Shown here in pieces: positions 27,805 to 50,318 of a DNA stretch of 64,000 bases (positions within the stretch are counted from its first letter, which is position 1; the number at the start of each line of letters is the position of its first letter). The stretch is taken from IMG/VR virus record IMGVR_UViG_3300049001_000044, positions 279,230 through 343,229 of that record, one strand, 5' to 3'. The notes under the pieces were generated by a model that worked only from the letters and a program-made list of their open reading frames with translations, ran no database searches and had not been told where the DNA came from. A program made the position numbers and the translations under genes.

Positions 27805-27814
27805 GTTGTTTTCC

Positions 27815-31322: not shown

Positions 31323-32150
31323 ATGCAAGCAAAATATGTTGCTCTGGGTTCTTACACTCAGGCGAACCTAATCTCTGACCTTGCTGCCATTCTTTGTGGC
31401 GCGCAAGTTGCAGACCTCTCAGCAACTTGCGACAAGGCAAACACCACGATCGTAAGCACTGTTGCCCCTGGCTGGACTCTGGTAGATGCCAACGCATCTA
31501 ACTTAGGTAAAGTCATCTCTGCCCCAGATATGAATGGCAATCCGAAGTATGTGTACATCTACGCATCAGGCACTTCGCAGATTGCTATCAGAGTGTATGA
31601 GACTTGGAACAGTACCACCCACACTGGTACTAACCCAAGTGGCGCATACGTCTTGAGCAATGGTACGAGCTTCATGGTCTTTGGTACCCCGCAAACAGCA
31701 TACATCTCCGGTGGTGCTGACGGTTTTGGTGTGCTCGAAGTGTCTCGTGATGTCGCATACCTGCAAAACAACACTACCTACCCCGCTACCGTTGCTGGCG
31801 GAGCATACGGTTTTAGTAGCCCGACGGCCATGTCAATGCCTAGGGGCAAGAATATGACAGCTGCCGGTGACACCCTACCGTACCCTGTTCAATCCGCAAC
31901 GATCACGGCAAGATCCAGCAGTTCGATTTTGGCTGGAACCACTGCACGGCAAGACGCCAACGGTGTTCAGTACATTGAAGTACGTCCTATTTGGATCGCT
32001 CTATCCGACAACACGATCATCGGCCGCCTCTACGATATCGCAGAGATCACTCGTGGTGGCTACACTGTGTTCGACACGTTCAGCGACGGTGTTGACACGT
32101 GGATGGTTCTCCCAGGCTATAGTGGTTTGATGGCTCTCAAGGTAAAGTAA
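31323..32150 (+). CDS. Tail/virion paralog 1 of 3
   Basis: Shared motifs DLS..CDK, PGWT, YETWN..THTGTN, DT.SDG, ALKV. Confidence 0.75.
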   Translation: MQAKYVALGSYTQANLISDLAAILCGAQVADLSATCDKANTTIVSTVAPGWTLVDANASNLGKVISAPDMNGNPKYVYIYASGTSQIAIRVYETWNSTTHTGTNPSGAYVLSNGTSFMVFGTPQTAYISGGADGFGVLEVSRDVAYLQNNTTYPATVAGGAYGFSSPTAMSMPRGKNMTAAGDTLPYPVQSATITARSSSSILAGTTARQDANGVQYIEVRPIWIALSDNTIIGRLYDIAEITRGGYTVFDTFSDGVDTWMVLPGYSGLMALKVK

Positions 32151-32164
32151 GGAAAGGAATTCTC

Positions 32165-33061
32165 ATGTTCGCAAAATACGTAACCACTTCTTCGCCTACT
32201 CAGGCAAATGTGATCGCTGATATCGCCGCTCTTTTGGCGGGCGCAGCAATTACTGACTTGTCCTCTTCTTGCGACAAGTCTAACTCAACCCTCTTGAGCA
32301 CTGTTGCCCCAGGTTGGACCATTACTGACAACAATGCTGGCAGCTCAGGATACATCCTTTCAGCGCCAGACCTGGCTGGCAACACCAAGTACGTCAAGCT
32401 ATTTGCTTCTAATGCAACGTACTTGGATATTCAGGCGTATGAAACCTGGAATTCCACCTCGCACACTGGTACTAATCCAACCACCGCACTTGGTGCAGTG
32501 TCGACCTCTCCAGGCGTGACAGTAAATGTTGTCAATTACTTTTTCATTTTTGCAACCGCGAGATCATTCATTGTTATGGGTGGCGGCTCTAATCCAGCAG
32601 GCGGTGGCGGTATTGGTGCATTTGAATTCACGAGAGAAGCAGCTTATCTCCAAGGAACCACCTACCCAGCAGTATGCGTCGGTATGTTGGCAGGTCTTAC
32701 CAATAGTAACAAAAACATGAACATTTCACGTACTAAGAATCTCACTGCCGCAGGAGATACTGTACCAACGACTGCTCTCTCCGCAACAATTGCCGCTCGC
32801 AATGTCGCCGCTGGGGGCATTACCTCGCCAACCTCCTACCTCATAGATGCGAATGGCACATACTACAATGAAATTCGCCCTATTTGGCTAGCTACTTCTG
32901 GCGCGGGGGCGGCAATCTATGGCAAGTGCATTGATGTGTTCGAGACGACTAACTTAAGCGCGGTCGGTAACCCTCTTGACACTCTGTCAGATGGCACCGG
33001 TACTTACATGATCTTGGTGCAGACCACTGGTGTTGGGACTTTGATCGCTAAGGTAGCATAA
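32165..33061 (+). CDS. Tail/virion paralog 2 of 3
   Basis: Same motif series as paralog 1. Confidence 0.75.
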   Translation: MFAKYVTTSSPTQANVIADIAALLAGAAITDLSSSCDKSNSTLLSTVAPGWTITDNNAGSSGYILSAPDLAGNTKYVKLFASNATYLDIQAYETWNSTSHTGTNPTTALGAVSTSPGVTVNVVNYFFIFATARSFIVMGGGSNPAGGGGIGAFEFTREAAYLQGTTYPAVCVGMLAGLTNSNKNMNISRTKNLTAAGDTVPTTALSATIAARNVAAGGITSPTSYLIDANGTYYNEIRPIWLATSGAGAAIYGKCIDVFETTNLSAVGNPLDTLSDGTGTYMILVQTTGVGTLIAKVA

Positions 33062-33071
33062 GGAGAAACAC

Positions 33072-33986
33072 ATGCTGGTAAAATACGTAACTAATGCGTC
33101 TGTGACGACCATAAACATTATTAACGATGTGGCTTTGCTCTGCACCGGCGGAAGCATTTCTGACTTGTCTACAGGCTGCGATAAAGTGTACACGACAATC
33201 TTGGCTAAGATTGTTAACCCTGGTTGGACTCTAGTTGACAACGCCGCTCCAAATACCGGCGTTGTCATTTCATCACCAGACGTGGATGGCAACATCAAGT
33301 ATGTGAGGCTATCTCTGGTGGGCGCAAGTAATAATGTAAGCTTTGACTTGTTCGAATCATGGAACGCTACGACTCACACTGGTACTAATCAATCTTCCTA
33401 CCCTGCAGCTGTAACAGCCACCGGCGGGTCGAAGCAAACTTTTTATCTTTACGTCACCCCAAGAACAATCTACTTTGCTAAACCTGCAACTATCTCTAAT
33501 GGTATCGTGACTCACAATGGTGGTGGAACATTTGAGGTCTCTAGGGATGCCCTCTATCTAAAGGGTACAAACTACCCCGCGTTTTGCACGGGAGCCGACC
33601 AGGGGCTAATACCATATGGAAGCGGCAACAGTTATTCAATGGTGTTCCCAAGAATTAAAAATCAGTCTGGTGTTGGTGATGTTACGGGCACAAGCGCGCT
33701 TGGCATGACTGGTACAATATGCGCCAAATACTACGGTGCCGGGGGCACGGTTGGCTCGCCAGGAAGGCCGAATAGAACCGCTACTGATGCCACATACTAT
33801 GACTTCCGTGACATGTGGGTACTTTGTAGCCTTTCAGGAAGCAATGGAACTATCCTAGGCAAGATGTATGATGTCAAAGAAATTGCGTATGGCGCTGCAA
33901 ATACGGGTGACACTTTCAGTGATGGTACAGATACTTACATGGCATTCTTGACTAACTATGGCTGCTTTGCATTGAAGGTGGCATAA
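33072..33986 (+). CDS. Tail/virion paralog 3 of 3
   Basis: Same motif series, more diverged. Confidence 0.75.
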   Translation: MLVKYVTNASVTTINIINDVALLCTGGSISDLSTGCDKVYTTILAKIVNPGWTLVDNAAPNTGVVISSPDVDGNIKYVRLSLVGASNNVSFDLFESWNATTHTGTNQSSYPAAVTATGGSKQTFYLYVTPRTIYFAKPATISNGIVTHNGGGTFEVSRDALYLKGTNYPAFCTGADQGLIPYGSGNSYSMVFPRIKNQSGVGDVTGTSALGMTGTICAKYYGAGGTVGSPGRPNRTATDATYYDFRDMWVLCSLSGSNGTILGKMYDVKEIAYGAANTGDTFSDGTDTYMAFLTNYGCFALKVA

Positions 33987-34417: not shown

Positions 34418-34834
34418 TTAGTCAAGGAAGATCACGCGTGCAGTGCCTGCCTGAGCAGCTGAGAACTGCAGTTCAACCGTATTTTCATCAATGATTCTGA
34501 TGAGGTCGGGGAGGATGACAGCTTTGTTCTCATCGAAGGCCTGGATGATCACATTCTCAGAATCGAGATTGTGTTCAATGGTCCAGACAGTTTCAGGAGA
34601 AGCAACCGCGAGTACGAACTTACGCACACTAGACAGGCCGCCAGCACCACCTAGGTTGGTACCAGTCAGCACACCATTCACCATAGCCAGAACTTGGCCT
34701 TCTGTCATGGTGACGCCATCGAACTGTCGAGCACCAGGACCACGACGAACAATGATCGACTCTTGAGGAACGTCTACATCCAGGTAACCACGCTTAGGAA
34801 GTTCCCGTTGGATGAAGTCTTCAAACGCGCTCAT
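34418..34834 (-). CDS. Virion/tail protein
   Basis: WTIEHNL...VIIQAFD motif. Confidence 0.7.
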   Translation of the reverse strand: MSAFEDFIQRELPKRGYLDVDVPQESIIVRRGPGARQFDGVTMTEGQVLAMVNGVLTGTNLGGAGGLSSVRKFVLAVASPETVWTIEHNLDSENVIIQAFDENKAVILPDLIRIIDENTVELQFSAAQAGTARVIFLD

Positions 34835-36495
34835 TATGCGGCCTCCGTAATATCAACCATCAAAGTACCAGTCGTGTTGGACTGTGCGTATGCAGAGTCA
34901 GTGAGGAAGAGATACCCACCGTTAGGGTCATACTGACCTTGCGCGTTCACAATGGTGAAGCCCTGGAAGTGGTCAACAGTATCCTTGAACAGAGTCAGGT
35001 TGTTCGCAGTACCAGAGTACTTTGCGGTTACCTTGTCGATGTTGCCGATAAGAGTGCCGATTGCGTGGTATTGCTCGAACGCTGCGAAGGTGATAGTGCG
35101 AGTTGCGAAACCACCAACAGTGTAACTTGCTCCAGCCGTGATCGTATTACCAATGACGCTTGCTTGGTTGGTCATCACCAAGTTGCTGAAGGTCTGTGCG
35201 CCTTTTGCATCGCCATCGACAATGCGCAGGGTACGCTGCCAGTTGTTACCAGACTGGGTCCATGCACCCTGCCAAGTACCCGAAGATGCGGTGAGCGAAG
35301 GAGCCGAAGACAGGGTTTCAGTAGGCGTGATGACGACGACGTAGTCAACACCAGTTGGCGAAGACAGCAGACGTGTTGGGTTACCAGTGATCGAGATCGA
35401 AGCGGTAGGAGCTGCGTCTGCGATAACGACCGCGCTAGATGCAGTGGAGACTGCGCCATTGCTGGTCTTGGTAGCCGTGATGGTGTAGTTATTCGAACCC
35501 GTTACGTAGGTACCAGACACGCGGGTAACGGTCTTCGACGCTGCGTAAGTAGATGGGTTCGCAACCGACAGGTTAGCAGAAGTCGTGTATGCCACAGTAT
35601 CTGCGTTGGTGATGGTAGCAGTGACGGTAGCTGATTCAGTACCCTTCAGAGCTGTTTGGCCAGCAGGATAAGTGATCGTACGTGCGCCAATCGTTGGGTA
35701 GGTTTGGTTCAGCGTGACGGTGTTGGTAGAGACGAACGTGTTACCAAAGGTACCAAGTGCATTCCTTCCGTGTGCCGAAACAGTCTGTGCGCCAGCACCC
35801 GAACCAACAGTGAAGGTACCACTGAAGGACTTGTAACCAGTGCCAAAGGAGTCGTCGCCGCCAAGGGTGAGCGAAGACAGACTACCAGCTGCGCCGCCAG
35901 CAATAATTTCTACATAGGTCGCAGCATTTTCAATACGACCGGAAATTTGTACCACGTCGCCCGACTTAACTTCAGTCTGAGAACCTGGTAGAGCGCCAAT
36001 CAGCAGGGTGTCCATCTGTGGGCCTGCTGCTGCGCGATGAACGACGCAAGTCGCAACACCGCCAGTCGAAGAGGTTGCGGTGACAGTGACGTCAGCAGTT
36101 ACGTTAGTGAGGTCAACGTAGCCAGTGAAGAAGCGTTTGTCACTTGCATCCTCAACCAGCGCCACGGTTGCTGGCATGCCTGGCAGGGGTGGGTTGGTAT
36201 CAACAGTGATCGTTGGGGAATAGAATTGCCCACCACCCTCAGCGATTAGAGTAACACGAACGTTGTTCGTGTCAGTCGTACCATCAGTGATGACCTTGTT
36301 TGAAGGAACGGTGTTAGGAACATACTGCTTTGCACCTACGTTACCAGTGGAAGTAGGTGCGATGTTCGTGAAGAAGACGCCACCGCCTGCACCCTGCGTA
36401 AGAGCAGAGACAAGGCGGTCAACGTACTGCTTCGTTACGGCGTCCATGTTCTGCGTTGGATCGTCCGAGAGTGATGCGTGTTGATAAATTTTCAT
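34834..36495 (-). CDS. Thr/Gly-rich beta-structured tail fibre or virion surface protein
   Basis: DAVTKQYVD repeat motif; Ig-like composition; CATAAATA at 36526-36533. Confidence 0.7.
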   Translation of the reverse strand: MKIYQHASLSDDPTQNMDAVTKQYVDRLVSALTQGAGGGVFFTNIAPTSTGNVGAKQYVPNTVPSNKVITDGTTDTNNVRVTLIAEGGGQFYSPTITVDTNPPLPGMPATVALVEDASDKRFFTGYVDLTNVTADVTVTATSSTGGVATCVVHRAAAGPQMDTLLIGALPGSQTEVKSGDVVQISGRIENAATYVEIIAGGAAGSLSSLTLGGDDSFGTGYKSFSGTFTVGSGAGAQTVSAHGRNALGTFGNTFVSTNTVTLNQTYPTIGARTITYPAGQTALKGTESATVTATITNADTVAYTTSANLSVANPSTYAASKTVTRVSGTYVTGSNNYTITATKTSNGAVSTASSAVVIADAAPTASISITGNPTRLLSSPTGVDYVVVITPTETLSSAPSLTASSGTWQGAWTQSGNNWQRTLRIVDGDAKGAQTFSNLVMTNQASVIGNTITAGASYTVGGFATRTITFAAFEQYHAIGTLIGNIDKVTAKYSGTANNLTLFKDTVDHFQGFTIVNAQGQYDPNGGYLFLTDSAYAQSNTTGTLMVDITEAA

Positions 36496-36534
36496 GGGAG
36501 CCCTTGAAAAGAAGAAAGTTCGGAGTATTTATGG

Positions 36535-38025
36535 TCAGAATACCTTAACCTGGTATTTGCTTGCAAATCGCTCACCATCTTCTACGGTGTTTACAAGAGG
36601 TTCGCCTTTGATGTTCAGCGAAGTGTTCAGCAGAACAGGGCAGCCGGTCTTCTCATACCACGCCTCTAGCACAGCATTGAAGAAGGGCGACTCATCGTGC
36701 GTAACGGTCTGTAAACGACCAGTACCATCAGCATGGGAGACTGCTGGTAGAGTTGTAGGAACCTTTACGACGCAGACCGCCTGCATGTATGGCACCTTGT
36801 CCAACTTTCCAGGCATGATGAAGTGATCGTGCTTGTATCTGTCCAATACAGCAGGAGCAAATGGTCGGAACTTCTGTCGCTTCTTGATTTCATTGACGCG
36901 ATCCTTCATCAAGTTACTGCGAGGGTCACCAAGTAGAGAGCGATTGCCAAGAGCTCTTGGCCCAAACTCAGCTCTACCAGTCATCACACCACAAACGCCC
37001 GTCGTAAGCAGCTCTTTCACCACGTCTGATGGGTCGATGTCAGAGTCGATGTTCGTACCAAGCATCGCGTTCTTCCAATTCAGTTGAGTGCGCAGATTAT
37101 TCGCGATCGCGCCTAAGGAGTTACCAGCATCGCCAGGATTAGGCATGATCCAGAAGTTGTCGAACTTATCGCCCAGTTTGGTTACTACTTCAGCGTTCGC
37201 AAGACAGTTCAAAGCAACGCCACCTGAGTAAACGATGTTCCTGCAGTTTGTCATGTCCAATGCCATCTCAATAACGCGCGAAATCTTGTGTGTTATGAGA
37301 GTCTGCGCCGCGAGAGCCAAGTCATATCTGCCTTGTTCGCCTTTCGCTTGACAAGCAAACTGGCTGCCTCTCATACCTCGATGGAGATTGGTTGTTTGGT
37401 GAAGATGACCATCGAAGAATTCCTCCTGCATTTCTGCTGCGATGAGGTCTGCACTTGAAGGATTGCCGTATGCGGCCATACCCATCAAGATGTACTCTTC
37501 TTCATTGGGCTTCAGACCTACCAAGTCGGTTACGGCACTGTAGAACAGACCGAGTGAGTGAGGATACTTCAGTGACCACACCCGCTTTAAGTTCGAACCT
37601 TTCCCATGCCAAATGGATGCAGTGGTTAGCTCGCCGATTGCGTCGATGACAACGCACACTGCCTCATCAAAACCTGAAGTGTAGAATCCACCGGCTGCAT
37701 GGGACTGGTGGTGATCGGAGTATTCGATCGGCGCAACAATTCCAAACTGCTTCATGTACTCTTTCGGAAAAGCCTGCATGACCTTGTCGAACTGCCCAGC
37801 CTTTATGAATCTCGCTTTTCTTCCCCATGGGTTCTCAAACCAAACGACCTTGCCTGGGGAACCAAACTGCAAAGCGTCTTGAATCAATTCGTTGTTGAGG
37901 TGTTCGTCGTTCTTAATCCTACTGTACCTTTCGGCATGGCCAGCAAAGAGGATGTCTTTCGTGACCGAATCTACGACCGAAATCGAAGCATCATGGTTAT
38001 CGGCGTTGACGCCCCAGATAATCAT
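36535..38025 (-). CDS. Carbamoyltransferase (NodU/CmcH/TobZ family)
   Basis: HDAS, ERYSRIK, HHQSHA, GGVALNC, EFGPRALGNRS, RPFAP, LNTSLN. Confidence 0.93.
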   Translation of the reverse strand: MIIWGVNADNHDASISVVDSVTKDILFAGHAERYSRIKNDEHLNNELIQDALQFGSPGKVVWFENPWGRKARFIKAGQFDKVMQAFPKEYMKQFGIVAPIEYSDHHQSHAAGGFYTSGFDEAVCVVIDAIGELTTASIWHGKGSNLKRVWSLKYPHSLGLFYSAVTDLVGLKPNEEEYILMGMAAYGNPSSADLIAAEMQEEFFDGHLHQTTNLHRGMRGSQFACQAKGEQGRYDLALAAQTLITHKISRVIEMALDMTNCRNIVYSGGVALNCLANAEVVTKLGDKFDNFWIMPNPGDAGNSLGAIANNLRTQLNWKNAMLGTNIDSDIDPSDVVKELLTTGVCGVMTGRAEFGPRALGNRSLLGDPRSNLMKDRVNEIKKRQKFRPFAPAVLDRYKHDHFIMPGKLDKVPYMQAVCVVKVPTTLPAVSHADGTGRLQTVTHDESPFFNAVLEAWYEKTGCPVLLNTSLNIKGEPLVNTVEDGERFASKYQVKVF

Positions 38026-38098
38026 TGTCTGATCTCCATTATATAAAGTGCGATGAAGTACTTATTCAAATTGATTTGTAACAAGTTTTACACTTAAC

Positions 38099-38130
38099 CT
38101 GTTTACAATCAGCGCGAACTTTAGTACAAT
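38099..38130 (+). promoter_or_regulatory. Strong early-type promoter CTGTTTAC-N18-TACAAT
   Basis: GTTTACA/-10 arrangement like T4 early promoters. Confidence 0.7.
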
Positions 38131-38162
38131 AAATCCATACTAACTCTCAGCGAGGTTTAAAA

Positions 38163-39029
38163 ATGAAGAAAATCAATGTGGCGGCAACTGTCCTGGTATC
38201 GATGATCCTCTCGGCCTGTGGCGGTGGAGGCGGTGGTAGTTCCACCCAAACCCCACCAGTCGCACAAGTCCCGGTCTCCCTGCCTATCCTCAACATTAAC
38301 GACCAACTCACCAAGTCCGCAAATGCTGACACCCTGGGCTTCGAGCCTGCGAACATGTCCCACACCTCGGGCGAACTGCAAACCAACACTGGGTTCTGGG
38401 GAGTGAAGTCGGCTTCCGCCTACTACGAGAACGTGGTGGGGACGATCGACCCGAATACGAACATCGCCAACGTCACCTTCAACTGGGACATCACGTCCTC
38501 GCAAACCCCTGGCGTTGTGAACTTCTCCAACATCACCTACGGCCTGCACCCTGGCTCCGCCTTCTCCACCACGAAGAAGCTCCCTGTGCGAGTGACGAGC
38601 ATGGGAGACCAGGTGGTAAATGCGGATGTGAAGACGAGCTGCGAGACCACGTGCTCCTACCAAACGATGCTGGACGTCTTCGTGATGAGTTCGAATAGCA
38701 CGAGCAACGCGGACATCGGAACCGAGATCGTCATTCTGACGGATCGCAACATCGGTCCTTCTGATCTGACGGGTGAAACAGCAACGATCGGCGGCGTCAC
38801 CTACAAGGTCGTGCACAACGGCTTCATCACCAACTGGAACGCCATCCAATACTTCGCGCCCATCGGTACCCCGATTAACTCGATGAAGATTAATGTCAAG
38901 GACTTCGTCAACGACGCTTTGCAACGTGGCTGGATTAAGAGCACCGACTACCTGGTCTCCATCGAACTGGGCACGGAAGTAATCCAGGGTAAGGGCAAGA
39001 CCGAGATCAAGAATCTGCACTTCAACTAA
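38163..39029 (+). CDS. Glycoside hydrolase family 12-like (endoglucanase fold) lipoprotein
   Basis: Lipobox LSAC plus poly-Gly; NFSNITYG, YQTMLDVF, GTEIVIL (nucleophile Glu), YLVSIELGTEV (acid/base Glu). Confidence 0.72.
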   Translation: MKKINVAATVLVSMILSACGGGGGGSSTQTPPVAQVPVSLPILNINDQLTKSANADTLGFEPANMSHTSGELQTNTGFWGVKSASAYYENVVGTIDPNTNIANVTFNWDITSSQTPGVVNFSNITYGLHPGSAFSTTKKLPVRVTSMGDQVVNADVKTSCETTCSYQTMLDVFVMSSNSTSNADIGTEIVILTDRNIGPSDLTGETATIGGVTYKVVHNGFITNWNAIQYFAPIGTPINSMKINVKDFVNDALQRGWIKSTDYLVSIELGTEVIQGKGKTEIKNLHFN

Positions 39030-39050
39030 ATCCTTTCCCTGCAAACAACG

Positions 39051-39075
39051 AAGGGTAGCGTAGGCTACCCTTTTT
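39051..39075 (+). terminator. Rho-independent terminator after GH12 gene
   Basis: AAGGGTAGC-GTAG-GCTACCCTTTTT. Confidence 0.8.
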
Positions 39076-39082
39076 GACGTGC

Positions 39083-39171
39083 GGACCTCCCAGAGACCTC
39101 CTACCTACTTGATGTAGAAGTTAGTGTCGAAATAGGCTATGCATCTCTGGACCTCTCTGGTAAGCTCTAGC
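39083..39171 (-). repeat. Dispersed element copy E3
   Basis: 55/75 ungapped identity to E4 by manual alignment; begins at the stop codon of 39167-39946. Confidence 0.8.
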
Positions 39172-39946
39172 GATAGTAAGAGTGATGCATGTCCTTGATT
39201 GCGTAGAAGTCATCTACTGAATCCATGCCCAAGACCTCTGCTCGATACATGATCTCTGGGAAGTTACTAGCAACCTTCATGTCCAAGTTAATGGCCTGTC
39301 CGTACTTCGTAAGCCTGGTCCCTGGTCCAAGAACATGATAGTTATCGATCCTCCGTTTTGGCGCTTCACCCTCGCGAATCTTTCGGAAGATATCGCAGAC
39401 CAGATCCATACCCCACGAGTCACCGAAGAAGATGCAATCTGACGCATTGAATTGGTTGTACTCTAATCCCATTCGATAGTTGTGCGGGAAGTAAATCGTG
39501 CGATCACCAATCCAATTGTCTCTTAATTGATCCATCACGCTGGTGTCAGGGTCAAAGACGTTATCGTACCGACATTTGAACACGACATCGTAGCGGAAGC
39601 CCATCTCAATCTCATGTGCACGCTTAAGATGGTTGGCAATCATCATCGACCAATACAAACTGCCAAAAGGAACGTATCCCATTGGCTCCTGCGCCTTGAA
39701 CAAATCTTCTTGCGTCTCAATGACGTAGGAAATTGGATTGAATTGTAACAGCTGTTCAGTCAACCAGTCCTTGTCAAGTTGTTGGTACTCGCCTATTGAA
39801 TGATCAGGAAGTTTCCAAGTGTTGTAGTCCCAAGCATGACAGAAGAAGTCAACTTGAACTCCTTCTGCATTAAAATATCTGAGGATAGATTTCCGAGCGA
39901 ACTCAATCGACCTAGGTTGCCCGGATAAACAGACTGCGATTCTCAT
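39167..39946 (-). CDS. Putative glycosyltransferase-like protein
   Basis: MRIAVCLSGQPR, FFCHAW, YDVVFKCRYD, SDCIFFG. Confidence 0.6.
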   Translation of the reverse strand: MRIAVCLSGQPRSIEFARKSILRYFNAEGVQVDFFCHAWDYNTWKLPDHSIGEYQQLDKDWLTEQLLQFNPISYVIETQEDLFKAQEPMGYVPFGSLYWSMMIANHLKRAHEIEMGFRYDVVFKCRYDNVFDPDTSVMDQLRDNWIGDRTIYFPHNYRMGLEYNQFNASDCIFFGDSWGMDLVCDIFRKIREGEAPKRRIDNYHVLGPGTRLTKYGQAINLDMKVASNFPEIMYRAEVLGMDSVDDFYAIKDMHHSYYR

Positions 39947-40451
39947 AATTGACACACTCAGTGGATAGGGAAAGGGTTTGCAGATGGTAATAGAACTTGG
40001 CGGCGTCATCTACGCTTGGACCGCGGATTTGATTGACGGGAATGTTCTTGAGATTAGTGTGGTACTCACACGCCCTATCGAATTCCCAACTGCGAGCGAT
40101 GAACACGCATGGGTTAACACTCGTCAGCCAATGCTTCTTGTCGAAGCCACCTGTCATGTAGTAGATGAAGTTCTTTTGAAGGTCGACCTTCTTGTCAGCA
40201 TCGTACACCATCTCGATGTGCCTTACGTCGAACATCACATCAGTGTCGTACGCCATACAGATTTTGAATTCGACGTGAGTCTGAAATTCAGCTGTCTTCT
40301 TCTTGTGCGATACAGTTTCGAGGGCAAGAAACTTGTCTTCGTCAAAGTGATGGAAGAAGGTCATTGGGAATGGGAACCACTTCTGAAGCTTAGCTTGAAG
40401 TTCAGTGGTGTCCACACTCTTGGTTCCGTAAAAGCAAACTGCGTAAGTCAT
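39912..40451 (-). CDS. Hypothetical protein, distantly similar to downstream gene
   Basis: YAVCFYG start; late glycan operon context. Confidence 0.6.
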   Translation of the reverse strand: MTYAVCFYGTKSVDTTELQAKLQKWFPFPMTFFHHFDEDKFLALETVSHKKKTAEFQTHVEFKICMAYDTDVMFDVRHIEMVYDADKKVDLQKNFIYYMTGGFDKKHWLTSVNPCVFIARSWEFDRACEYHTNLKNIPVNQIRGPSVDDAAKFYYHLQTLSLSTECVNYENRSLFIRAT

Positions 40452-40458
40452 GTCAACC

Positions 40459-40551
40459 TCAGTAGATGAACGGATCGGATTTGTTCTTCTTTCGCTTGTA
40501 CTGGCGATATGCCATCTTCCAGGATTCGAGTAAGTTCTTAATGAAGGTCAT
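40459..40551 (-). CDS. Very small basic protein (30 aa, not in track)
   Basis: MTFIKNLLES...KRKKNKSDPFIY, coupled. Confidence 0.5.
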   Translation of the reverse strand: MTFIKNLLESWKMAYRQYKRKKNKSDPFIY

Positions 40552-41390
40552 AGGATGTTTCTCATCTTGATTTGATCGTGCAGATATTTAGCCCACGCCG
40601 CATGTCCTGACTCCAATGGGTGACCACCATTTCCTGTTGGATTTTCAGGATAGGACCATTCGCAGAACCACGTTGTCTCCACATTGCTGAACAGCTGGCG
40701 CAGCGTGAAATTTTCTGGCGCGTAAATGAAGTTAGGAGCATTGAAGTTGACCAACTCAAACATCGTCTGTAGCTCTTCAGACTCGACGGCTTTCTCAACG
40801 TCATCCCTTTCGTAGTATTGCTGGATTGAAGACACGAGCGAATGGGTGAATACGTACTTGATCTTCTTCGACTCCAAGAATGTCTTCAGTGAGATGATAC
40901 TTTGCAGGTAGTTGGTAATGTTGTAGATGGGATCACCACTTACCCACTTAACGTGCTTCTTCAGGTAGTCTAGAAATTCAGGTGACAGATCAGTGGTGTT
41001 CTTTTGGATCTGTGCGACAAGATCAGGGATGAACTGTCGCCATTGCCCACGATGTCTAGTCTCAAACCGCTCGTATGCCGTCCATCCGACGATCACGAAG
41101 ATGTCTTCAGGCTTGTGTGTCTTGAGCAACTTGCCAACCGCTGAGATGGTAGTGCGAGCAATCCTTTCGTTGCTGCTTCCGCCCAGACCTTCGTTAAGTA
41201 CCTCCATGCCGAGCGAGCGAGCCAACACCGCAGGCCACGCATGATACTCCATATGAGCGTAGTGTTGAGGGGTCAACGCGCTGTAAGTGCGGCTAGTTGC
41301 AACACCAAACTTCTTTTCATCCCATCCAAATTGTTTATTGCCAAGTTCGCTACCCTCAGTTAGCGAACACCCGTTCGCGTACAAAATCAT
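40548..41390 (-). CDS. SGNH/GDSL hydrolase-like (acyl-esterase/transferase fold)
   Basis: ANGCSLTEG (block I Ser), GGSSNE, GHPLESGH. Confidence 0.7.
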   Translation of the reverse strand: MILYANGCSLTEGSELGNKQFGWDEKKFGVATSRTYSALTPQHYAHMEYHAWPAVLARSLGMEVLNEGLGGSSNERIARTTISAVGKLLKTHKPEDIFVIVGWTAYERFETRHRGQWRQFIPDLVAQIQKNTTDLSPEFLDYLKKHVKWVSGDPIYNITNYLQSIISLKTFLESKKIKYVFTHSLVSSIQQYYERDDVEKAVESEELQTMFELVNFNAPNFIYAPENFTLRQLFSNVETTWFCEWSYPENPTGNGGHPLESGHAAWAKYLHDQIKMRNIL

Positions 41391-41980
41391 GTTACGTCCT
41401 TCATGGTGATAAGAGTGTGCGGGTCAACTTTAACCACTGTCGCCTTCGAAGCACGTGCCGCAGCTATCCCACTTGGTGAATCTTCGAAGATAACAGTATC
41501 ATCGTAATTCACCGAAAGCTTTTCCATTACTTTTTGAAAGATTTCTGGATCAGGCTTAGGCTTGCTAACCTCATCTCCTGCAATGACTAAATCGAGGTAT
41601 GGCTTTACGCCGATCTTTTCCAAGATCAGATCAACATACAGACGACGAGAGTTACTTGCGACAGCAATGTAGAAGGGATTTGCTGAGAAATGTTCCATCA
41701 CCCTAATCGCTTCTTCGTTGCTAGGCAGGTTGGACATCAGCGACATCGTCGCCTCTTGCTTTAAGAGATCAATCTTGCGGACGTCTGCTGCTTTGAGTTG
41801 GTACTTAGCGCGCAAAACTTCCAACTTGTCAATGGTGCGAACGCCGTCGCTTGCATCAAGAAGAGGAAGTTTGGATGCTTCCTCACCAATGACTTCAAGT
41901 ACGGCTTGACGGAATGCGGAGGTGTGAATGGATGAGGTGTCGACTAACACCCCATCGAGATCAAATATTGCAAGTTTCAT
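41387..41980 (-). CDS. HAD-superfamily phosphatase (beta-PGM-like)
   Basis: FDLDGVLVD, KPKPDP, FEDSPSG. Confidence 0.9.
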   Translation of the reverse strand: MKLAIFDLDGVLVDTSSIHTSAFRQAVLEVIGEEASKLPLLDASDGVRTIDKLEVLRAKYQLKAADVRKIDLLKQEATMSLMSNLPSNEEAIRVMEHFSANPFYIAVASNSRRLYVDLILEKIGVKPYLDLVIAGDEVSKPKPDPEIFQKVMEKLSVNYDDTVIFEDSPSGIAAARASKATVVKVDPHTLITMKDVT

Positions 41981-42413
41981 GTGTGACGATGGACACGTAG
42001 TCCGTGCAAATGCCGTAGATGCTCTTATCTATTGCGTTTACGTCGCCAATCAGTTCAGGCATAACTGCGATCGAGTGCCTGCTCAGTTGTTTCCCAGGGT
42101 AGGTCCAAATATAACCTGACGACGTCAATGTGAAGTCGTCTTCTTGGTGCCAGAAGTAATGCTTGGTCTTACAAATACGAAGAGTGTTTAGGGCAGCGAA
42201 GTTCTTCGCATGGCACCATAACCCTGGCGTTTTTAGGAATGAAGGATTGACATGGTAGGTGGGCGCGTCGTGTCCTAACCAGATACCGCCTTGGTGGAAC
42301 CATACATCAATCTCCACGTCATATCCCGCTGCGAGCGCCTCCTCAATGTAGGAGGGCTCATTCTCGCGGTTAGACGGGCCGTTCCTATTACCTCGGTGCG
42401 CGATCAGTCTCAT
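41961..42413 (-). CDS. Short glycerophosphodiesterase-like protein
   Basis: IAHRGN, ENEP, DVEIDV, LGHD, ICTDY. Confidence 0.75.
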   Translation of the reverse strand: MRLIAHRGNRNGPSNRENEPSYIEEALAAGYDVEIDVWFHQGGIWLGHDAPTYHVNPSFLKTPGLWCHAKNFAALNTLRICKTKHYFWHQEDDFTLTSSGYIWTYPGKQLSRHSIAVMPELIGDVNAIDKSIYGICTDYVSIVTHETCNI

Positions 42414-43110
42414 GCTTGATGTATGCCTCTAAATCTTCAGGAGTTCCCACACCATGCATTTCGTCAACTGGCATGGTAATTACTTTGTGACCCAGCGCTA
42501 CGTTTTGAGTGTAGACTGGAGCAACGTAGAATTCGTTCTTGTAGCGGATGTTCTTCTTAATCATTAACTCCGCTGCATCAACGAACTGACTACCCTTGTA
42601 CCAAAAGTAGAGACCTGCTGTGGCATGAGTGCTGACGGGTACCTTCTCAACGACTTCAGTTACGAACCCATGCTTATCCAGCTTCGCGAAGCTCCACTTT
42701 GGATCGGTATCTTCGAACGTCATGATCACACCATCAGCGTGTGTGTAGAGAGGAGTGACACTTGCTTCGTTGAACTTGATGATGTTGTCAGAGTTCATGA
42801 TCGCCAATGGCTCATCATTGTTAATGAGGTGCTTTGCTTGAAGCACGGTACATGCGGCTCCCTCAGTCACGCCATCAATGACGACCACATCACATCCTTC
42901 GTATCGTTCTTGAAGGAAGTTCTTCACGTCGTATTTCTCAACGTGCTCTTTCTGGACGATAAAGATCAGATGTCTAATTGCAAGAGGGAACGAATCTACG
43001 ACATGCTCAATCATCGTCTTACCAAGGAACTTGATGAGGGGCTTTGGGTCAGTGTATCCCGCCGCACTGAAGCGGGACCCTAAACCCGCCATTGGAATGA
43101 GAAGGTTCAT
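42388..43110 (-). CDS. Sugar-phosphate nucleotidyltransferase
   Basis: IPMAGLGSRF, PKPLI, GAACTVL, VVEK, GVGTPEDL. Confidence 0.85.
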   Translation of the reverse strand: MNLLIPMAGLGSRFSAAGYTDPKPLIKFLGKTMIEHVVDSFPLAIRHLIFIVQKEHVEKYDVKNFLQERYEGCDVVVIDGVTEGAACTVLQAKHLINNDEPLAIMNSDNIIKFNEASVTPLYTHADGVIMTFEDTDPKWSFAKLDKHGFVTEVVEKVPVSTHATAGLYFWYKGSQFVDAAELMIKKNIRYKNEFYVAPVYTQNVALGHKVITMPVDEMHGVGTPEDLEAYIKHETDRAPR

Positions 43111-43311: not shown

Positions 43312-43581
43312 TCAGGGGTTCTTTTTAACGTATCGAATATTAGGAGGTTCATCTACCTCAACTGCGCCATCAAACATTGATGTATCAATCCAGTCAACAT
43401 CATAGTTGTTTGGGCCGGTGCTGACTCTATACTGCTCACTTGGAAGACCAGCATTTCGTGGCCCTGTCTCTACGAACACTGTCTCACCCGCGTAATCACC
43501 ATGCTCAGGTTTATCAGCGAGTCGATAGCACTTCCCAATCTGTGGTCTAAACGTGGCCTCAAATAGTTCCGCCATTTTCAT
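43312..43581 (-). CDS. Small putative internal head protein
   Basis: Leader MKMAELFE|A. Confidence 0.6.
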   Translation of the reverse strand: MKMAELFEATFRPQIGKCYRLADKPEHGDYAGETVFVETGPRNAGLPSEQYRVSTGPNNYDVDWIDTSMFDGAVEVDEPPNIRYVKKNP

Positions 43582-44501
43582 TTGTTAGCCTCGACTTCGG
43601 TTAGGACTGCATTTAAATTGCGCTTGGGCGCTTCGTAGACGGACTTGAAGAAGGATGATGCGTCAGCGGTCATGTCAGCAATGTTCATACCCAGATCTTT
43701 CTTCAGTGGAATGAGCAGGTCTGCGCTCGCCTTCAACAGGCTTTCTTCGGTTGCAAACTTCGGTTTGATCTCTTCATGGAAGTACTTCTTGAACCAATCG
43801 TAGTCAGAAATCTGTGCGATGTCGAAGTCGGCTTCGATGTTGGCCATGTAGATGCCGAGCCTAGTGCCGTAGACAGCCCACACTCCGTTCTCTACGTCAG
43901 CACCAACAGAAGCCCAAATCAGCAGGCGCTTGTAGTTGGTTGCGTAGACAGAGTTTTGAATGAGACCTGTTGCTTTCGCACCGCGATCAAGAGTCATCTT
44001 CACACCTTCACGGAAGCCTGCGCGGAAGGCTTGGAAGGGCGAGCCATTAATGCACGTGTCGGAGTAGGTGTTGTTGAGCTGGACGTAGTTGTCGTCCCAG
44101 CAGAAGTCTACTTTTTCTTCGTCACGTGTTGCGTTCTCATGAGTGCGCATGTTCAACACGAAGTCTTTGGTCCACAGCTTCAGACCACCGTTGCCGTAGT
44201 GGAGACCGTTGACGATGTTCCTTGCTCCCCAGCTCAGCGTCTTGTCATCGAGATGGGCGGGGATGTCCAACTCCAAATCGAAGAACTCGTCGTAGACTAG
44301 GTTGTCGCCGTCGACAGTGATGAACTTATCAGTACTAGATGCGTTCGCGCAGGCCTTGTGCGCGCTATCAAATCCCTTTACTCCATCAACGCGTTGAGCC
44401 CATGGACACTGATCTTGCAGCTTTGCCCAGAACTCTTCCTTTTGCGGTTCATCATAGGAGAGGTAGAAGAGATCGAAGTCTGAGATGGAATGTTTAGCCA
44501 T
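43578..44501 (-). CDS. GT-A-like glycosyltransferase
   Basis: ITVDGD (DxD), YGNGGLKLW, AFRAGFREG; paralog of the 24507 N-terminal domain. Confidence 0.7.
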   Translation of the reverse strand: MAKHSISDFDLFYLSYDEPQKEEFWAKLQDQCPWAQRVDGVKGFDSAHKACANASSTDKFITVDGDNLVYDEFFDLELDIPAHLDDKTLSWGARNIVNGLHYGNGGLKLWTKDFVLNMRTHENATRDEEKVDFCWDDNYVQLNNTYSDTCINGSPFQAFRAGFREGVKMTLDRGAKATGLIQNSVYATNYKRLLIWASVGADVENGVWAVYGTRLGIYMANIEADFDIAQISDYDWFKKYFHEEIKPKFATEESLLKASADLLIPLKKDLGMNIADMTADASSFFKSVYEAPKRNLNAVLTEVEANK

Positions 44502-45123
44502 TTTGGAATGATACGGATAGAGGCCCCCTCACCGCGAACACTGAGAGATCATCAACGTCTTTCAGGTTAAGGCGAATTGGATTGGGCCAGGATGGGAGGT
44601 TGTTGTAAGTGGTGATTTCGTTGAGGATATTTACGTCCAACGAGAAGGCGCACTTCAGGTACGTCATGTCACCCTCCCTCGTAAAGTACATCTTGACGGG
44701 ATTTGAGATCGTCTTCAGCTTTTCCCCATCGTAGTAAATCTCCACAACACCTTCATCCTTCAACACCTTCAGTCGAATGTCATCCCAGTCATTAGGCTTC
44801 ACCTCATAAATGCCCAACCCAATATCTACGCGATTCAGTTTGACAGTGTGCGGTTGAATCTTTTGGAAGACAAACAACTTGTCATCAGGTATGATCGACC
44901 ACGAGATTGGATTCTCTTCGCCGGTGATGAACTTCAAACCCAACTCATAATCCACTTCTAAACATTTCTCATCTTCCACCGTCACGTCACACGAGCTAAT
45001 CGACTTAATTTGCAGAGTGGTGCTGTTAAAGTGGACGTAGAATTTTGGTTCGACGGGTGCGGGTGCGGGTGTTGGCGCAAAGTCTTGCGTGCTAGACAGC
45101 ACTTGCATGAGCTGTTCGATCAT
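44494..45123 (-). CDS. Hypothetical protein
   Basis: 209 aa, coupled in operon. Confidence 0.65.
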   Translation of the reverse strand: MIEQLMQVLSSTQDFAPTPAPAPVEPKFYVHFNSTTLQIKSISSCDVTVEDEKCLEVDYELGLKFITGEENPISWSIIPDDKLFVFQKIQPHTVKLNRVDIGLGIYEVKPNDWDDIRLKVLKDEGVVEIYYDGEKLKTISNPVKMYFTREGDMTYLKCAFSLDVNILNEITTYNNLPSWPNPIRLNLKDVDDLSVFAVRGPLSVSFQNG

Positions 45124-45977: not shown

Positions 45978-46138
45978 TTGTACCACTCCGGATGTTCTTC
46001 TCTCAATTTAGCGTATGCTTCCTGCTCGTGCTGTCGATATTCAACAGCACGTTCTTCCCATCCAGGACCACCTTCATATCGAATCATGGTCGAATAGAGC
46101 ATCATGATCTGGTATTCTGCTTTTTCTTTCTCCGTCAT
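45974..46138 (-). CDS. Small protein (54 aa, not in track)
   Basis: MTEKEKAEYQ...EHPEWYK, coupled both sides. Confidence 0.55.
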   Translation of the reverse strand: MTEKEKAEYQIMMLYSTMIRYEGGPGWEERAVEYRQHEQEAYAKLREEHPEWYK

Positions 46139-50201: not shown

Positions 50202-50318
50202 TAGACCCCCGAAAAAGTGGTTTACGAAAAGGACTCCAACACCGAGGTACAATCATCCGGAGAAAGGAAGGATCAGCTTCCTTTCGAAAAAGCGGTTTTG
50301 GGAGAACATCGTGCGGAC

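What the first reader, a model, noticed from the sequence alone, without database searches (positions are those of the whole stretch)
38099..39075. Self-contained early cassette encoding a GH12 endoglucanase-like lipoprotein
Seen: the gene runs opposite to its neighbours, with its own GTTTAC-N18-TACAAT promoter and terminator, a lipobox LSAC, both GH12 catalytic Glu motifs, and visibly more C-ending codons than adjacent genes. It sits between the carbamoyltransferase and glycan operon, beside element E3. Inference: a host-derived, membrane-anchored beta-glucanase made early in infection. It could strip cellulose or EPS from the infected cell (progeny release, receptor removal/superinfection exclusion) or alter plant-associated host behaviour. 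It is not a virion depolymerase.
Basis: partly seen in the sequence, partly recalled or inferred. Interest (0 to 1): 0.66.

Follow-up and report, generated by a model that had tools for sequence, protein, structure and literature searches.

The report
Jumbo-phage GH12 glucanase lipoprotein cassette
A 343-kb soil phage carries a stand-alone gene for a membrane-tethered sugar-chain-cutting enzyme (a GH12 beta-glucanase), and the same cassette recurs in related giant phages, so it is a kept phage tool for acting on the host's surface sugars rather than a one-off stolen host gene.

Summary
ORF 38163-39029 (+, 288 aa) runs against its neighbours. It has a sigma-70-like promoter (TTTACA-N17-TACAAT, 10/12), an SD, a hairpin terminator, a lipobox (LSAC, Cys19) and a Gly/Pro linker. 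Its GH12 domain passes Pfam (44 bits, cut-off 27), folds as GH12 and keeps both catalytic Glu (E188, E272). GC3 is 0.77, third of 424 ORFs.

"Host-derived" is too simple. The window is the end of a 343,229-bp jumbo phage distantly related to Ralstonia phage RsoM2USA. GH12 lipoproteins lie in the same variable sugar-gene island beside a conserved gene block in three other related phage contigs (L016, L020, L039). L005, with a phage gene beside it and no shared block, carries the closest one. Five phage or phage-like copies have a sigma-70-like promoter ending 31-32 nt before the ATG (25 nt in L039). The closest relative (L023) has an FG-GAP lipoprotein in that slot. One bacterial copy (L002) is an AT-rich island.

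No GH12 was found in 50,697 deposited phage genomes or in BFVD. Activity, substrate, lipidation and timing are untested: there are no RNA data and the host is unknown. The most likely role is early, host-RNAP-driven display of a beta-glucanase that trims envelope or matrix glucan.

The parts
38078..38130 (+). Promoter block. An upstream motif (GTAACAAG TTTTACACTT) is followed by the -35 hexamer TTTACA (38102-38107), a 17-nt spacer and the -10 hexamer TACAAT (38125-38130).
   Evidence: The site scores 10/12 to the sigma-70 consensus. The same ~53-nt block occurs only once more in the 343-kb genome, before ORF 51480-51884. The phage homologue loci L005, L016, L020 and L018 have a sigma-70-like site ending 31-32 nt before the ATG. 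L023 has TTACAC..GTTTACA-N17-TATAAT at its lipoprotein slot, ending 62 nt before that gene's ATG.
38152..38155 (+). Shine-Dalgarno sequence GAGG, 7 nt before the ATG.
   Evidence: Read from the sequence.
38163..39029 (+). Coding sequence of 288 aa plus the TAA stop: a GH12 lipoprotein precursor.
   Evidence: ORF list. Pfam PF01670 scores 44.1 bits against a cut-off of 27. The best PDB match is 2jen/2jem, E 2e-13. The AF2 model has pLDDT 81.6, and all 50 Foldseek hits listed are GH12 chains. dN/dS against the L005 copy is 0.24.
38163..38219 (+). Signal peptide with lipobox L-S-A-C. Cys19 (38217-38219) would become the lipidated N-terminus, and residue +2 is Gly.
   Evidence: The leader is MKK, a 13-residue hydrophobic run, then LSAC. 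The same A/S-C-GGGG leader occurs in most relatives. The N-terminal 38 residues match phage families phrog_32117 and phrog_542.
38220..38285 (+). Gly-rich then Pro-rich tether, residues 20 to about 41.
   Evidence: pLDDT is below 50 for residues 1-30, and the first strand of the model starts at residue 43. Composition read from the sequence.
38286..39026 (+). GH12 beta-jelly-roll catalytic domain. It holds the NTGFWG motif (residues 75-80), the Cys160/Cys164 pair, the nucleophile E188 (38724-38726), E268, and the acid/base E272 (38976-38978).
   Evidence: E188 aligns with the residue mutated in the nucleophile variants 2jem and 2jen. E268 and E272 align with the EFGTE motif of that enzyme. These residues are invariant or nearly so in 12 and 38 relatives.
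39051..39075 (+). Intrinsic terminator between the convergent genes: a 7-10 bp G+C-rich stem, loop GTAG, then a T-run.
   Evidence: A similar hairpin plus T-run follows the gene in L005, L020, L039 and L002. The L002 stem (GGGTAGCC/GGCTACCC) is nearly the same as the window's.
39087..39170 (.).
   Evidence: It is 73% complementary to the copy at 51317-51396. The family has about 20 loci in the genome, mostly as inverted 17-mers 64 nt apart. Folding gives a long hairpin.
38157..39044 (-). Antisense open frame of 295 aa, judged a shadow of the GC3-rich gene and not a gene.
   Evidence: All homology evidence lies on the + strand frame.

Best explanation
The cassette encodes a secreted, lipid-anchored GH12 retaining endo-beta-1,4-glucanase, and the phage expresses it as an independent unit.

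Shown by sequence, fold or comparison:
- GH12 membership, with both catalytic Glu present.
- A signal-peptidase-II type leader.
- Its own sigma-70-like promoter, SD and terminator.
- Purifying selection since divergence from the closest copy.
- Recurrence of the same cassette in related jumbo phages, inside a variable sugar-gene island downstream of a conserved gene block.

Inferred:
- Host RNA polymerase with its primary sigma factor reads the promoter as soon as the DNA enters. That would be before, or independently of, the phage's nATAAATA (T4-late-like) promoters.
- The precursor is exported by Sec, lipidated at Cys19 and, with Gly at +2, sorted to the outer membrane of a Gram-negative host.
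- The catalytic domain hangs on a tether of about 25 residues.
- There it cleaves a beta-1,4-glucan-type polymer of the host envelope or matrix, such as cellulose-like EPS or another beta-glucan.
- During a long jumbo-phage latent period this would strip or remodel the surface of the infected cell. Infected cells and debris would then stop trapping phage (superinfection exclusion, or receptor or decoy removal), and progeny would escape the matrix.
For: Enzyme identity:
- Pfam PF01670 scores above the gathering cut-off.
- PDB phmmer hits are all GH12. The best is the B. licheniformis xyloglucanase, with query E188 at the engineered nucleophile position.
- The AF2 model matches GH12 structures at TM 0.65-0.85, normalised by target length.
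- E188, E268, E272, C160 and C164 are conserved in relatives.

Lipoprotein:
- The leader is MKK, a hydrophobic run, then LSAC-GGGGGG.
- The leader type is shared by most of the 60 nearest representatives.
- The genome holds about eight other small candidate lipoproteins, so the host pathway is used.

Independent unit:
-.
- A sigma-70-like promoter ends 31-32 nt before the ATG in the window, L005, L016, L020 and L018, and 25 nt before it in L039.
- None of 9/12 or better was found in five bacterial or unclear contexts.
- A late-type motif nATAAATA lies 20-35 nt upstream of roughly two dozen other ORFs (22 at 20-40 nt), including the neighbouring tail-sheath-like gene, but not in exact form before this gene.

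Kept by phages:
- L016 has the order PhoH, 484 aa, 126 aa, 300 aa, 289 aa, 211 aa, 325 aa, GH12, then Rnl1 and Rnl2. All but the 126-aa ORF (no blastp hit) match the window's genes at 34-69% identity.
- L020 holds GH12 against its neighbours, between a HAD-NTP-transferase fusion and a radical SAM gene, beside the same block.
- L039 holds a convergent GH12 lipoprotein 3.7 kb after the conserved gene.
- dN/dS against the L005 copy is 0.24.

The long latent period (270 min) of the nearest cultured relative, RsoM2USA, is from PMC8504454.
Against: - No enzyme assay, no evidence of lipidation and no transcript data exist. The only run holding the DNA is a soil metagenome of contigs.
- The host is unknown, so no substrate polymer can be named.
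- The family lacks the Trp of the usual E-[IL]-M-[IV]-W nucleophile motif (here EIVIL). It scores only 44 bits to Pfam, and its more distant phage members fall below Pfam detection. Specificity may therefore differ from characterised GH12 enzymes.
- The -10 region overlaps ATAAATC, one mismatch from the late-type motif and at the usual distance. Late or dual expression is not excluded.
- In L023 the slot holds a non-enzymatic FG-GAP lipoprotein. The selected property of the slot may therefore be surface display in general rather than glucan cleavage.
Confidence: 0.5

Rival explanations
1. Auxiliary metabolic gene. The phage supplies a cell-surface glucanase so that the infected soil bacterium can draw more sugar from plant cell-wall polymers (cellulose, xyloglucan) during a long infection.
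For: - The source is a soil metagenome.
- The best solved match is a xyloglucan-specific GH12.
- The neighbouring carbamoyltransferase falls in a PHROG class named 'moron, auxiliary metabolic gene and host takeover'.
- Virus-encoded glycoside hydrolases have been reported as soil AMGs (own knowledge, not checked here).
Against: - It is a single endo-enzyme with no beta-glucosidase, binding module or transporter beside it.
- It recurs among surface-sugar synthesis genes, not catabolic genes.
- The slot can instead hold an FG-GAP lipoprotein with no catalytic role in carbon gain.
Confidence: 0.2
2. Processing enzyme of the adjacent sugar island. Like the hydrolases encoded in bacterial exopolysaccharide operons (the BcsZ, PslG or WssD type), it would trim or release a glycan that the neighbouring phage genes build or modify. 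Those genes are a GT-like gene, NTP-transferase, HAD, carbamoyltransferase and DUF7796-like.
For: GH12 lies next to nucleotide-sugar or glycan genes in four phage contexts:
- The window.
- L020, beside a HAD-NTP-transferase fusion and a radical SAM gene.
- L039, beside methyltransferase-like ORFs (read from the sequence, no family match) and a UDP-glucose dehydrogenase.
- L005, beside a DUF7796-like gene and a radical SAM gene.

The conserved 307-aa gene next to the island has DxD-like motifs (reading of the sequence).
Against: - It is a separate transcription unit on the opposite strand, with a different promoter type from its neighbours.
- In L016 it follows the conserved block directly, with no sugar genes between.
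- RsoM2USA has the conserved gene and the radical SAM gene but no lipoprotein.
- 79 of 80 related IMG/VR loci lack GH12 within 10 kb.
Confidence: 0.17
3. Recent passenger taken from the host: a bacterial lipoprotein gene captured with little or no role for the phage.
For: - GC3 ranks third of 424 ORFs.
- The gene nests within a clade that includes a chromosomal bacterial copy (L002) and a copy in an integrase-bearing island (L021).
- The other GC3-rich ORFs of the phage, as read from their sequences, look like cellular-type genes: DNA ligase, UvrD-type helicase, NAMPT.
Against: - The gene is present at the same locus in three other related phage contigs of very different GC. L005, a phage-like contig, carries the closest copy.
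- dN/dS is 0.24, and the catalytic residues are invariant.
- The promoter block is phage-type: it is shared with another cassette of this genome and with L005 and L023.
- In L002 the gene is the foreign, AT-rich part.
Confidence: 0.08
4. Catalytically altered binding protein. The GH12 fold would serve as a glycan-binding lipoprotein, masking or binding a receptor, rather than as a hydrolase.
For: - The family diverges from canonical GH12 around the nucleophile (EIVIL instead of E-[IL]-M-[IV]-W).
- The Pfam score is low, and distant members are undetected.
- The alternative cargo in L023 is a binding-type FG-GAP propeller.
Against: - Both catalytic Glu and the NxxWG motif are invariant in the close family. 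E188 and E272 are kept in at least 90% of the 38 relatives.
- That pattern is what would be expected of an active enzyme.
Confidence: 0.05

Closest known systems
Bacillus licheniformis GH12 xyloglucanase XG12 (PDB 2JEN/2JEM) and other solved GH12 endoglucanases
   Same: - Same family by Pfam and the same beta-jelly-roll fold.
- The nucleophile Glu aligns with the engineered residue of 2jem and 2jen.
- The ExGTE acid/base motif is shared.
   Different: - Only 21-22% identity.
- It has a lipoprotein leader and tether instead of a plain secretion signal.
- It lacks the Trp after the nucleophile.
- It carries a conserved Cys160-x3-Cys164 pair.
- It is encoded by a phage.
- Its substrate is unknown.
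Phage morons: independent promoter-gene-terminator units added between phage genes (PMC3594210)
   Same: - It has its own host-type promoter and terminator.
- Its orientation is opposite to the surrounding operons.
- Its codon composition is deviant.
- It is absent from most relatives at that locus.
   Different: - Morons are described mainly in temperate phages and are expressed from prophages. This is a T4-like, lytic-type jumbo phage.
- The cassette, promoter position included, is conserved across distant relatives rather than newly added.
Phage lipoproteins that act on the infected cell surface, such as T5 Llp and Cor of T1/phi80-like phages (own knowledge; Cor is mentioned in PMC13673623)
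   Same: A phage-encoded lipoprotein made in the infected cell and targeted to the envelope. The proposed benefit is the same: no superinfection and no loss of progeny on debris.
   Different: Llp and Cor are small proteins that block a protein receptor (FhuA) by binding. This one is a 27-kDa glycoside hydrolase that would remove or cut a polysaccharide.
Virion-borne or soluble phage polysaccharide depolymerases (tail spikes)
   Same: A phage enzyme aimed at a host surface or matrix polysaccharide.
   Different: - It has no tail-fibre or tail-spike module, and its N-terminus is a lipoprotein signal.
- It is not under the late-type promoter motif.
- The fold is a GH12 jelly roll, not a beta-helix.
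- BFVD holds no viral protein of this fold.
Virus-encoded glycoside hydrolases reported as soil auxiliary metabolic genes (own knowledge, not checked here)
   Same: A soil virus carrying a carbohydrate-active enzyme of cellular type.
   Different: - The family is GH12. No phage GH12 turned up in one whole-word search of the paper library (top 12 of 57 hits read by title and abstract) or in 50,697 phage records.
- It is lipid-anchored.
- It is embedded in a conserved phage locus.

Membership tests
Glycoside hydrolase family 12 (Pfam PF01670, clan GH-C) | Sequence match to the family profile above the curated cut-off | tested here: met
   The score is 44.1 bits against a cut-off of 27, E 3.5e-11, over residues 76-280 and profile positions 7-196 of 207. 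A genome-level search gave 45.3 bits.
Glycoside hydrolase family 12 (Pfam PF01670, clan GH-C) | Beta-jelly-roll fold of two curved antiparallel sheets | tested here: met
   The AF2 model has pLDDT 81.6 and is all-beta. All 50 Foldseek PDB hits listed are GH12 chains, with E down to 8.5e-16 and TM (by target) 0.65-0.85. This is a predicted structure, not a solved one.
Glycoside hydrolase family 12 (Pfam PF01670, clan GH-C) | Catalytic nucleophile Glu | tested here: met
   E188 aligns with chain position 155 of 2jen and 2jem, where the two deposited sequences differ (A or Q). E188 is invariant in 12 relatives and kept in at least 90% of 38 relatives.
Glycoside hydrolase family 12 (Pfam PF01670, clan GH-C) | Catalytic acid/base Glu in the G-x-E motif near the C-terminus | tested here: met
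   The query motif ELGTE (E268, E272) aligns with EFGTE of 2jen, and both Glu are conserved. Choosing the GTE Glu as the acid/base rests on own knowledge of fungal Cel12A.
Glycoside hydrolase family 12 (Pfam PF01670, clan GH-C) | Endo-beta-1,4-glucanase, xyloglucanase or mixed-linkage glucanase activity with retention | not testable with these tools
   Needs the purified protein and substrates.
Bacterial lipoprotein (signal peptidase II substrate) | Positively charged n-region, a hydrophobic h-region of 7-22 residues, and a lipobox [LVI][ASTVI][GAS]C | tested here: met
   The leader reads M-K-K, then INVAATVLVSMI, then L-S-A-C19. The same pattern occurs in most of the 60 nearest representatives.
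Bacterial lipoprotein (signal peptidase II substrate) | Diacylglyceryl modification, globomycin-sensitive cleavage and membrane localisation | not testable with these tools
   Outer-membrane sorting is inferred only from Gly at +2 (the E. coli rule, own knowledge). The host is unknown.
Phage moron | Own promoter and terminator flanking a gene between phage operons | tested here: met
   The gene is divergent from the carbamoyltransferase and convergent with the sugar operon.
Phage moron | Present in some relatives and absent from others at the same position | tested here: met
   GH12 is present in L016, L020 and L039. It is absent within 10 kb of the conserved gene in 79 of 80 IMG/VR loci, and no GH12 was found anywhere in the RsoM2USA record. 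L023 carries a different cargo.
Phage moron | Nucleotide composition unlike the rest of the phage | tested here: met
   GC3 is 0.77 against a genome mean of 0.58 (z 2.5, rank 3 of 424). The excess is smaller or absent in L016, L020 and L039.
Phage moron | Expression independent of the lytic programme (from a prophage) | not tested
The relatives are lytic (PMC8504454). No RNA data exist.
Virion-associated polysaccharide depolymerase | Fusion to a tail-fibre or tail-spike anchoring domain, and late expression | tested here: not met
   The N-terminus is a lipoprotein leader. There is no PHROG tail family match and no significant BFVD structural match. The exact late-type motif is absent.

The most novel reading that the evidence does not exclude
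This clade of giant phages keeps a modular 'lipoprotein display slot'. Its fixed parts are a conserved host-type promoter, a lipobox leader with a poly-Gly tether and, in some members, an Ig-like spacer. Exchangeable effector domains are plugged into these: a GH12 glucanase here and in L005, L016, L020 and L039, and an FG-GAP propeller in L023. The phage would use the slot to re-engineer the host's outer surface early in infection. The slot would also export such genes to bacteria: the L002 copy is an AT-rich island with a nearly identical terminator stem. An enzyme displayed on the infected cell to destroy a glycan receptor would be a mechanism of superinfection exclusion not yet described for phages.
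Probability: 0.3. Interest if true: 0.72.

Novelty: new variant of a known kind. Interest (0 to 1): 0.58.

Why it matters
- Phage enzymes against host polysaccharides are known as virion parts, and phage lipoproteins are known as small receptor blockers. A lipid-anchored glycoside hydrolase, made from a host-type promoter and kept at one locus across distant giant phages, joins the two ideas. It suggests that infected cells are enzymatically 'shaved' from within.
- It gives a concrete, cheap test: one 27-kDa enzyme, two point mutants and a panel of glucans.
- It flags a whole metagenome-only GH12 subfamily, parts of which Pfam does not detect.
- It shows that a compositional anomaly together with an own promoter does not by itself mean a recent theft from the host.

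Tried and rejected
- Close DNA relatives in 50,697 phage records: none for 36000-41000. tblastn with P0001 and with P0158 also found none.
- Pattern scans for the GH12 subfamily found nothing: IMG/VR and 185,579 species genomes. These scans use a few peptide patterns, so they are not exhaustive. The L039 copy in IMG/VR was found only through its neighbour gene.
- A broader alignment (A3) was too diverse for the pattern search.
- Carbamoyltransferase-based relatives (L008-L015) share no synteny beyond that gene.
- Taxonomy of the bacterial carriers and of the host could not be obtained. All family members looked up are metagenome-only and carry no useful names.
- Expression could not be tested. 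No RNA run holds the stretch, and the single DNA holder is probably the source sample.
- The idea that high GC3 marks highly expressed structural genes was rejected. The other top-GC3 ORFs read as ligase, helicase and NAMPT-like genes, not capsid or tail genes.
- The antisense 295-aa ORF was rejected as a gene.
- No complex prediction was run, because no binding claim is made.
Full report
**What the window is.** The window is bases 279,230-343,229 of a 343,229-bp virus record with direct terminal repeats, at 50.5% GC. Its DNA polymerase is closest to that of Ralstonia phage RsoM2USA (47% aa). Next come Xanthomonas phage XacN1 and Stenotrophomonas phage CM1, with Xanthomonas phage Xoo-sp13 close behind (36-38%). 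Its topoisomerase gives the same company. These are lytic jumbo myophages of soil and plant-associated Proteobacteria (PMC8504454). The only public run holding the stretch is a soil metagenome. A 324,809-bp Logan contig from that run covers 36000-41500 without a single difference. The junctions of the cassette therefore do not depend on one assembler, although the reads are probably the same.

**The observation.** Every item holds.
- ORF 38163-39029 (+, 288 aa) lies between - strand genes 36535-38025 and 39167-40009.
- The promoter is GTTTAC (38101-38106) and TACAAT (38125-38130). The scan reads the same site as TTTACA-N17-TACAAT, 10 of 12.
- In the whole genome only 23 sites reach 10/12, 11 of them in the 12.7% of sequence that is non-coding. 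This one ends 32 nt before the ATG.
- GAGG lies 7 nt before the ATG.
- The terminator is GGGTAGC-GTAG-GCTACCC followed by five T, at 39053-39075. It sits between convergent genes and was scored on the - strand too.
- The leader is MKK, 13 hydrophobic residues, then LSAC with Cys19, followed by GGGGGGSS and a Pro-rich stretch.
- GC3 is 0.77 and C3 is 0.48, against 0.48-0.61 and 0.26-0.37 in eight neighbours. The gene ranks third (GC3) and fourth (C3) of 424 ORFs.
- The neighbours are a carbamoyltransferase on one side and DUF7796-like, DUF6071, HAD and NTP-transferase genes on the other.
- The 'element E3' is an ~80-nt palindromic repeat at 39087-39170, a degenerate member of a family with about 20 loci in the genome.

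**What the protein is.**
- Pfam PF01670 (GH12) scores 44.1 bits against a cut-off of 27.
- All significant PDB sequence hits are GH12. The best is the B. licheniformis xyloglucanase (2jen/2jem, E 2e-13).
- The two deposited sequences differ at chain position 155, the engineered nucleophile, and the query's E188 aligns with that position. The query's ELGTE aligns with EFGTE of that enzyme.
- An AlphaFold model built on seven relatives (pLDDT 81.6) is all-beta from residue 43. All 50 Foldseek PDB hits listed are GH12 chains, with TM 0.65-0.85 by target.
- E188, E268, E272, the NTGxWG motif and a Cys160/Cys164 pair are invariant in the close family. They are nearly invariant in 38 relatives. A conserved Cys pair fits an exported protein.
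- The family differs from textbook GH12 in lacking the Trp after the nucleophile (EIVIL).
- I file it as a GH12 member on sequence and fold. Activity and substrate are untested.

**Where its relatives are, which changes the story.**
- The word-indexed search of 5.8 billion proteins found only six relatives at 42-68% identity.
- The exhaustive profile search of 1.84 billion representatives found 30 at E<1e-30 and 1,187 in all.
- Most of the nearest 60 carry the same A/S-C-GGGG lipoprotein leader.
- Those looked up are metagenome-only.
- In a maximum-likelihood tree the window's protein groups with P0002, P0003 and P0005 (support 95). P0004 and P0006 join next (support 100). All sit inside clades of 15 and 40 lipoprotein GH12s (support 99).

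Contexts of the relatives:
- P0006 lies in a bacterial chromosome (L002) beside CheA, CheZ and a TonB receptor. There the gene has GC 0.49 in a 0.66 contig, so it is the foreign part.
- P0160 lies in an island with a TIR protein and an integrase.
- P0158 lies on an 80-kb ENA contig and a 24.5-kb Logan contig (L016, L017); a 119,691-bp contig is also on record. Its gene order is PhoH, 484 aa, 126 aa, 300 aa, 289 aa, 211 aa, 325 aa, GH12, then Rnl1 and Rnl2. All but the 126-aa ORF, which gave no blastp hit, match the window's 49386-50252, 47466-49205, 46135-47007, 45120-45986, 44494-45123, 43578-44501, 29369-30496 and 26686-27846 at 34-69% identity.
- P0010 (L020, GC 0.27) lies against its neighbours between a HAD-NTP-transferase fusion and a radical SAM gene, next to the same block.
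- Of 80 IMG/VR loci fetched around the conserved 307-aa gene, one has a GH12. It is L039, from a 364,576-bp contig. Its convergent GH12 lipoprotein lies 3.7 kb downstream, after two methyltransferase-like ORFs (my reading of the sequence) and a UDP-glucose dehydrogenase.
- The closest locus, L023 (72% identity), has in that place a 469-aa lipoprotein with the same leader and an FG-GAP domain. It is followed by DUF7796-like repeats and a radical SAM gene, the very neighbours of the closest GH12, P0002, in L005.
- L005's upstream gene is a phage nucleotidyltransferase (phrog_388). It matches a G000 ORF.
- RsoM2USA has the conserved gene and the radical SAM gene but no lipoprotein.

The GH12 lipoprotein is thus a recurrent occupant of one variable sugar-gene island in this phage lineage. 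Its GC tracks each phage's GC (0.33/0.27, 0.43/0.40, 0.44/0.40, 0.56/0.50). dN/dS against the L005 copy is 0.24, with dS near saturation.

**The cassette frame is conserved too.**
- A sigma-70-like site ends 31-32 nt before the ATG in the window (TTTACA-17-TACAAT), L005 (TTTACA-18-TATAGT), L016 (TGTACA-17-TATAAT), L020 (TTGACA-16-TATATT) and L018 (TTGACT-17-TACCAT). In L039 it ends 25 nt before the ATG.
- No site of 9/12 or better precedes the gene in L002, L006, L007, L021 or L022.
- Hairpin plus T-run terminators follow the gene in the window, L005, L020, L039 and L002. The L002 stem is almost the same as the window's.
- Within this genome the ~53-nt promoter block occurs just twice. The second copy stands before a 134-aa membrane-protein ORF (51480-51884), which is also GC3-rich and also followed by terminators and the palindromic repeat.
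- By contrast, roughly two dozen ORFs carry nATAAATA 20-35 nt upstream (22 at 20-40 nt), among them the tail-sheath-like gene next door. This is a T4-late-like motif.
- The GH12 gene has only a one-mismatch overlap with that motif (ATAAATC).
- This is the basis for calling expression host-polymerase-driven and probably early. It is an inference, and no RNA data exist.

**Mechanism proposed.** Host RNA polymerase reads the promoter. Sec exports the precursor. It is lipidated at Cys19 and, with Gly at +2, probably sent to the outer membrane. The GH12 domain on its tether then cuts a beta-1,4-glucan-type polymer of the envelope or matrix. I rate the molecular description (GH12 lipoprotein, independent unit, maintained by phages) at about 0.9. 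I rate early timing at about 0.55. I rate the purpose (stripping surface or matrix glucan to stop superinfection and loss of progeny and to ease release) at about 0.4. Rivals, in order:
- An auxiliary metabolic gene for plant glucans.
- A processing enzyme for the glycan made by the adjacent genes.
- A functionless recent capture from the host.
- A non-catalytic binding protein.

**Comparison and novelty.**
- The cassette works like a moron (PMC3594210), but it sits in a lytic-type jumbo phage and is conserved.
- It is like the Llp and Cor lipoproteins in where it would act, but it would act by hydrolysis rather than by blocking.
- It is like depolymerases in target class, but it is not virion-borne.
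- No GH12 is present in 50,697 deposited phage genomes. No GH12-fold protein is present in BFVD. No phage GH12 appeared in the 12 top-ranked papers, read by title and abstract, of a whole-word search that returned 57.
- The distant phage members (L016, L020, L039) are invisible to Pfam.
- I rate it a new variant of a known kind, of moderate to good interest.

Noticed in passing
window 51480-51963 (- strand) and 51317-51410: A second cassette has the same frame as the GH12 one. It has the same ~53-nt promoter block (the only other copy in the genome), a 134-aa multi-pass membrane ORF with GC3 0.75, two hairpin terminators, and then the ~80-nt palindromic repeat in the same relative orientation.
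   Followed up: partly
window 39087-39170, 51317-51410, 26219-26257, 56593-56676, 7143-7169; about 20 loci in G000: A family of ~80-nt palindromic intergenic repeats. Each has CCAGAGGTGCTCAGAGA and its complement 64 nt apart, start to start. Nearly all copies lie between genes. Their function is unknown; terminator, processing site and mobile miniature element are all possible.
   Followed up: partly
G000 genome-wide; in the window, for example upstream of 34834-36495, 9312-10805, 20186-21250 and 47466-49205: The motif nATAAATA, usually with G or C first, lies 20-35 nt upstream of roughly two dozen ORFs. 37 of its 62 occurrences in the genome are within 120 nt of an ORF start. It looks like a T4-type late promoter with a relaxed first base.
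   Followed up: partly
L023:11127-12536 (+): In the closest related phage contig, the slot after the conserved gene holds a 469-aa lipoprotein. It has the same CGGGGGGG leader, an Ig-like spacer resembling that of the L016 GH12, and FG-GAP repeats instead of GH12. A TTTACA-N17-TATAAT promoter precedes it and a hairpin terminator follows it.
   Followed up: partly
L002:10001-10870 and its flanks: In a 257-kb bacterial contig of 65.6% GC, the GH12 lipoprotein gene has 48.9% GC. A 665-aa lipoprotein gene of 59.7% GC stands before it. Its terminator stem is nearly identical to the window's. This suggests the gene and terminator entered the bacterium from a lower-GC source such as a phage.
   Followed up: partly
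window 43578-44501 (-); L023-L102: The 307-aa protein next to the island has no Pfam or PHROG match but carries DxD-like motifs. It has at least 600 relatives in IMG/VR, yet only one among deposited phages (RsoM2USA, 52%). A paralogue lies at window 24507-25856.
   Followed up: partly
L016:8001-9077, L020:3503-4600, L039:14659-15690: These phage GH12 lipoproteins are 28-44% identical to the window's protein and carry an extra Ig-like N-terminal domain. They give no Pfam hit at E 0.01, so routine annotation would miss them.
   Followed up: yes
G000 102097-103491, 41050-42642, 76217-77731 (outside the window): The other most GC3-rich ORFs of the phage look like a DNA ligase, a UvrD-type helicase and a nicotinamide phosphoribosyltransferase. 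This is judged from their sequences only. GC3 richness seems to mark cellular-type accessory genes rather than structural genes.
   Followed up: no
G000 194901-195092, 130120-130685, 80400-80639, 16221-16655, 116449-116694, 59593-59904: About eight further small ORFs (63-144 aa) have typical lipobox leaders. None has the poly-Gly run after the Cys.
   Followed up: no
window 31323-33986 (+): Three tandem paralogous ORFs of 275, 298 and 304 aa share conserved 30-44-nt blocks (repeat families D1 and D13). They lie on the + strand just upstream of the tail-sheath-like gene region.
   Followed up: no
L018:7010-8858: On a phage-like 42-kb contig, two lipoprotein genes stand in tandem: one of 296 aa with unknown function, then a GH12 of 285 aa. 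Each small gene of the region is framed by a repeated hairpin and a TTGACTGG..TACCAT promoter unit.
   Followed up: no
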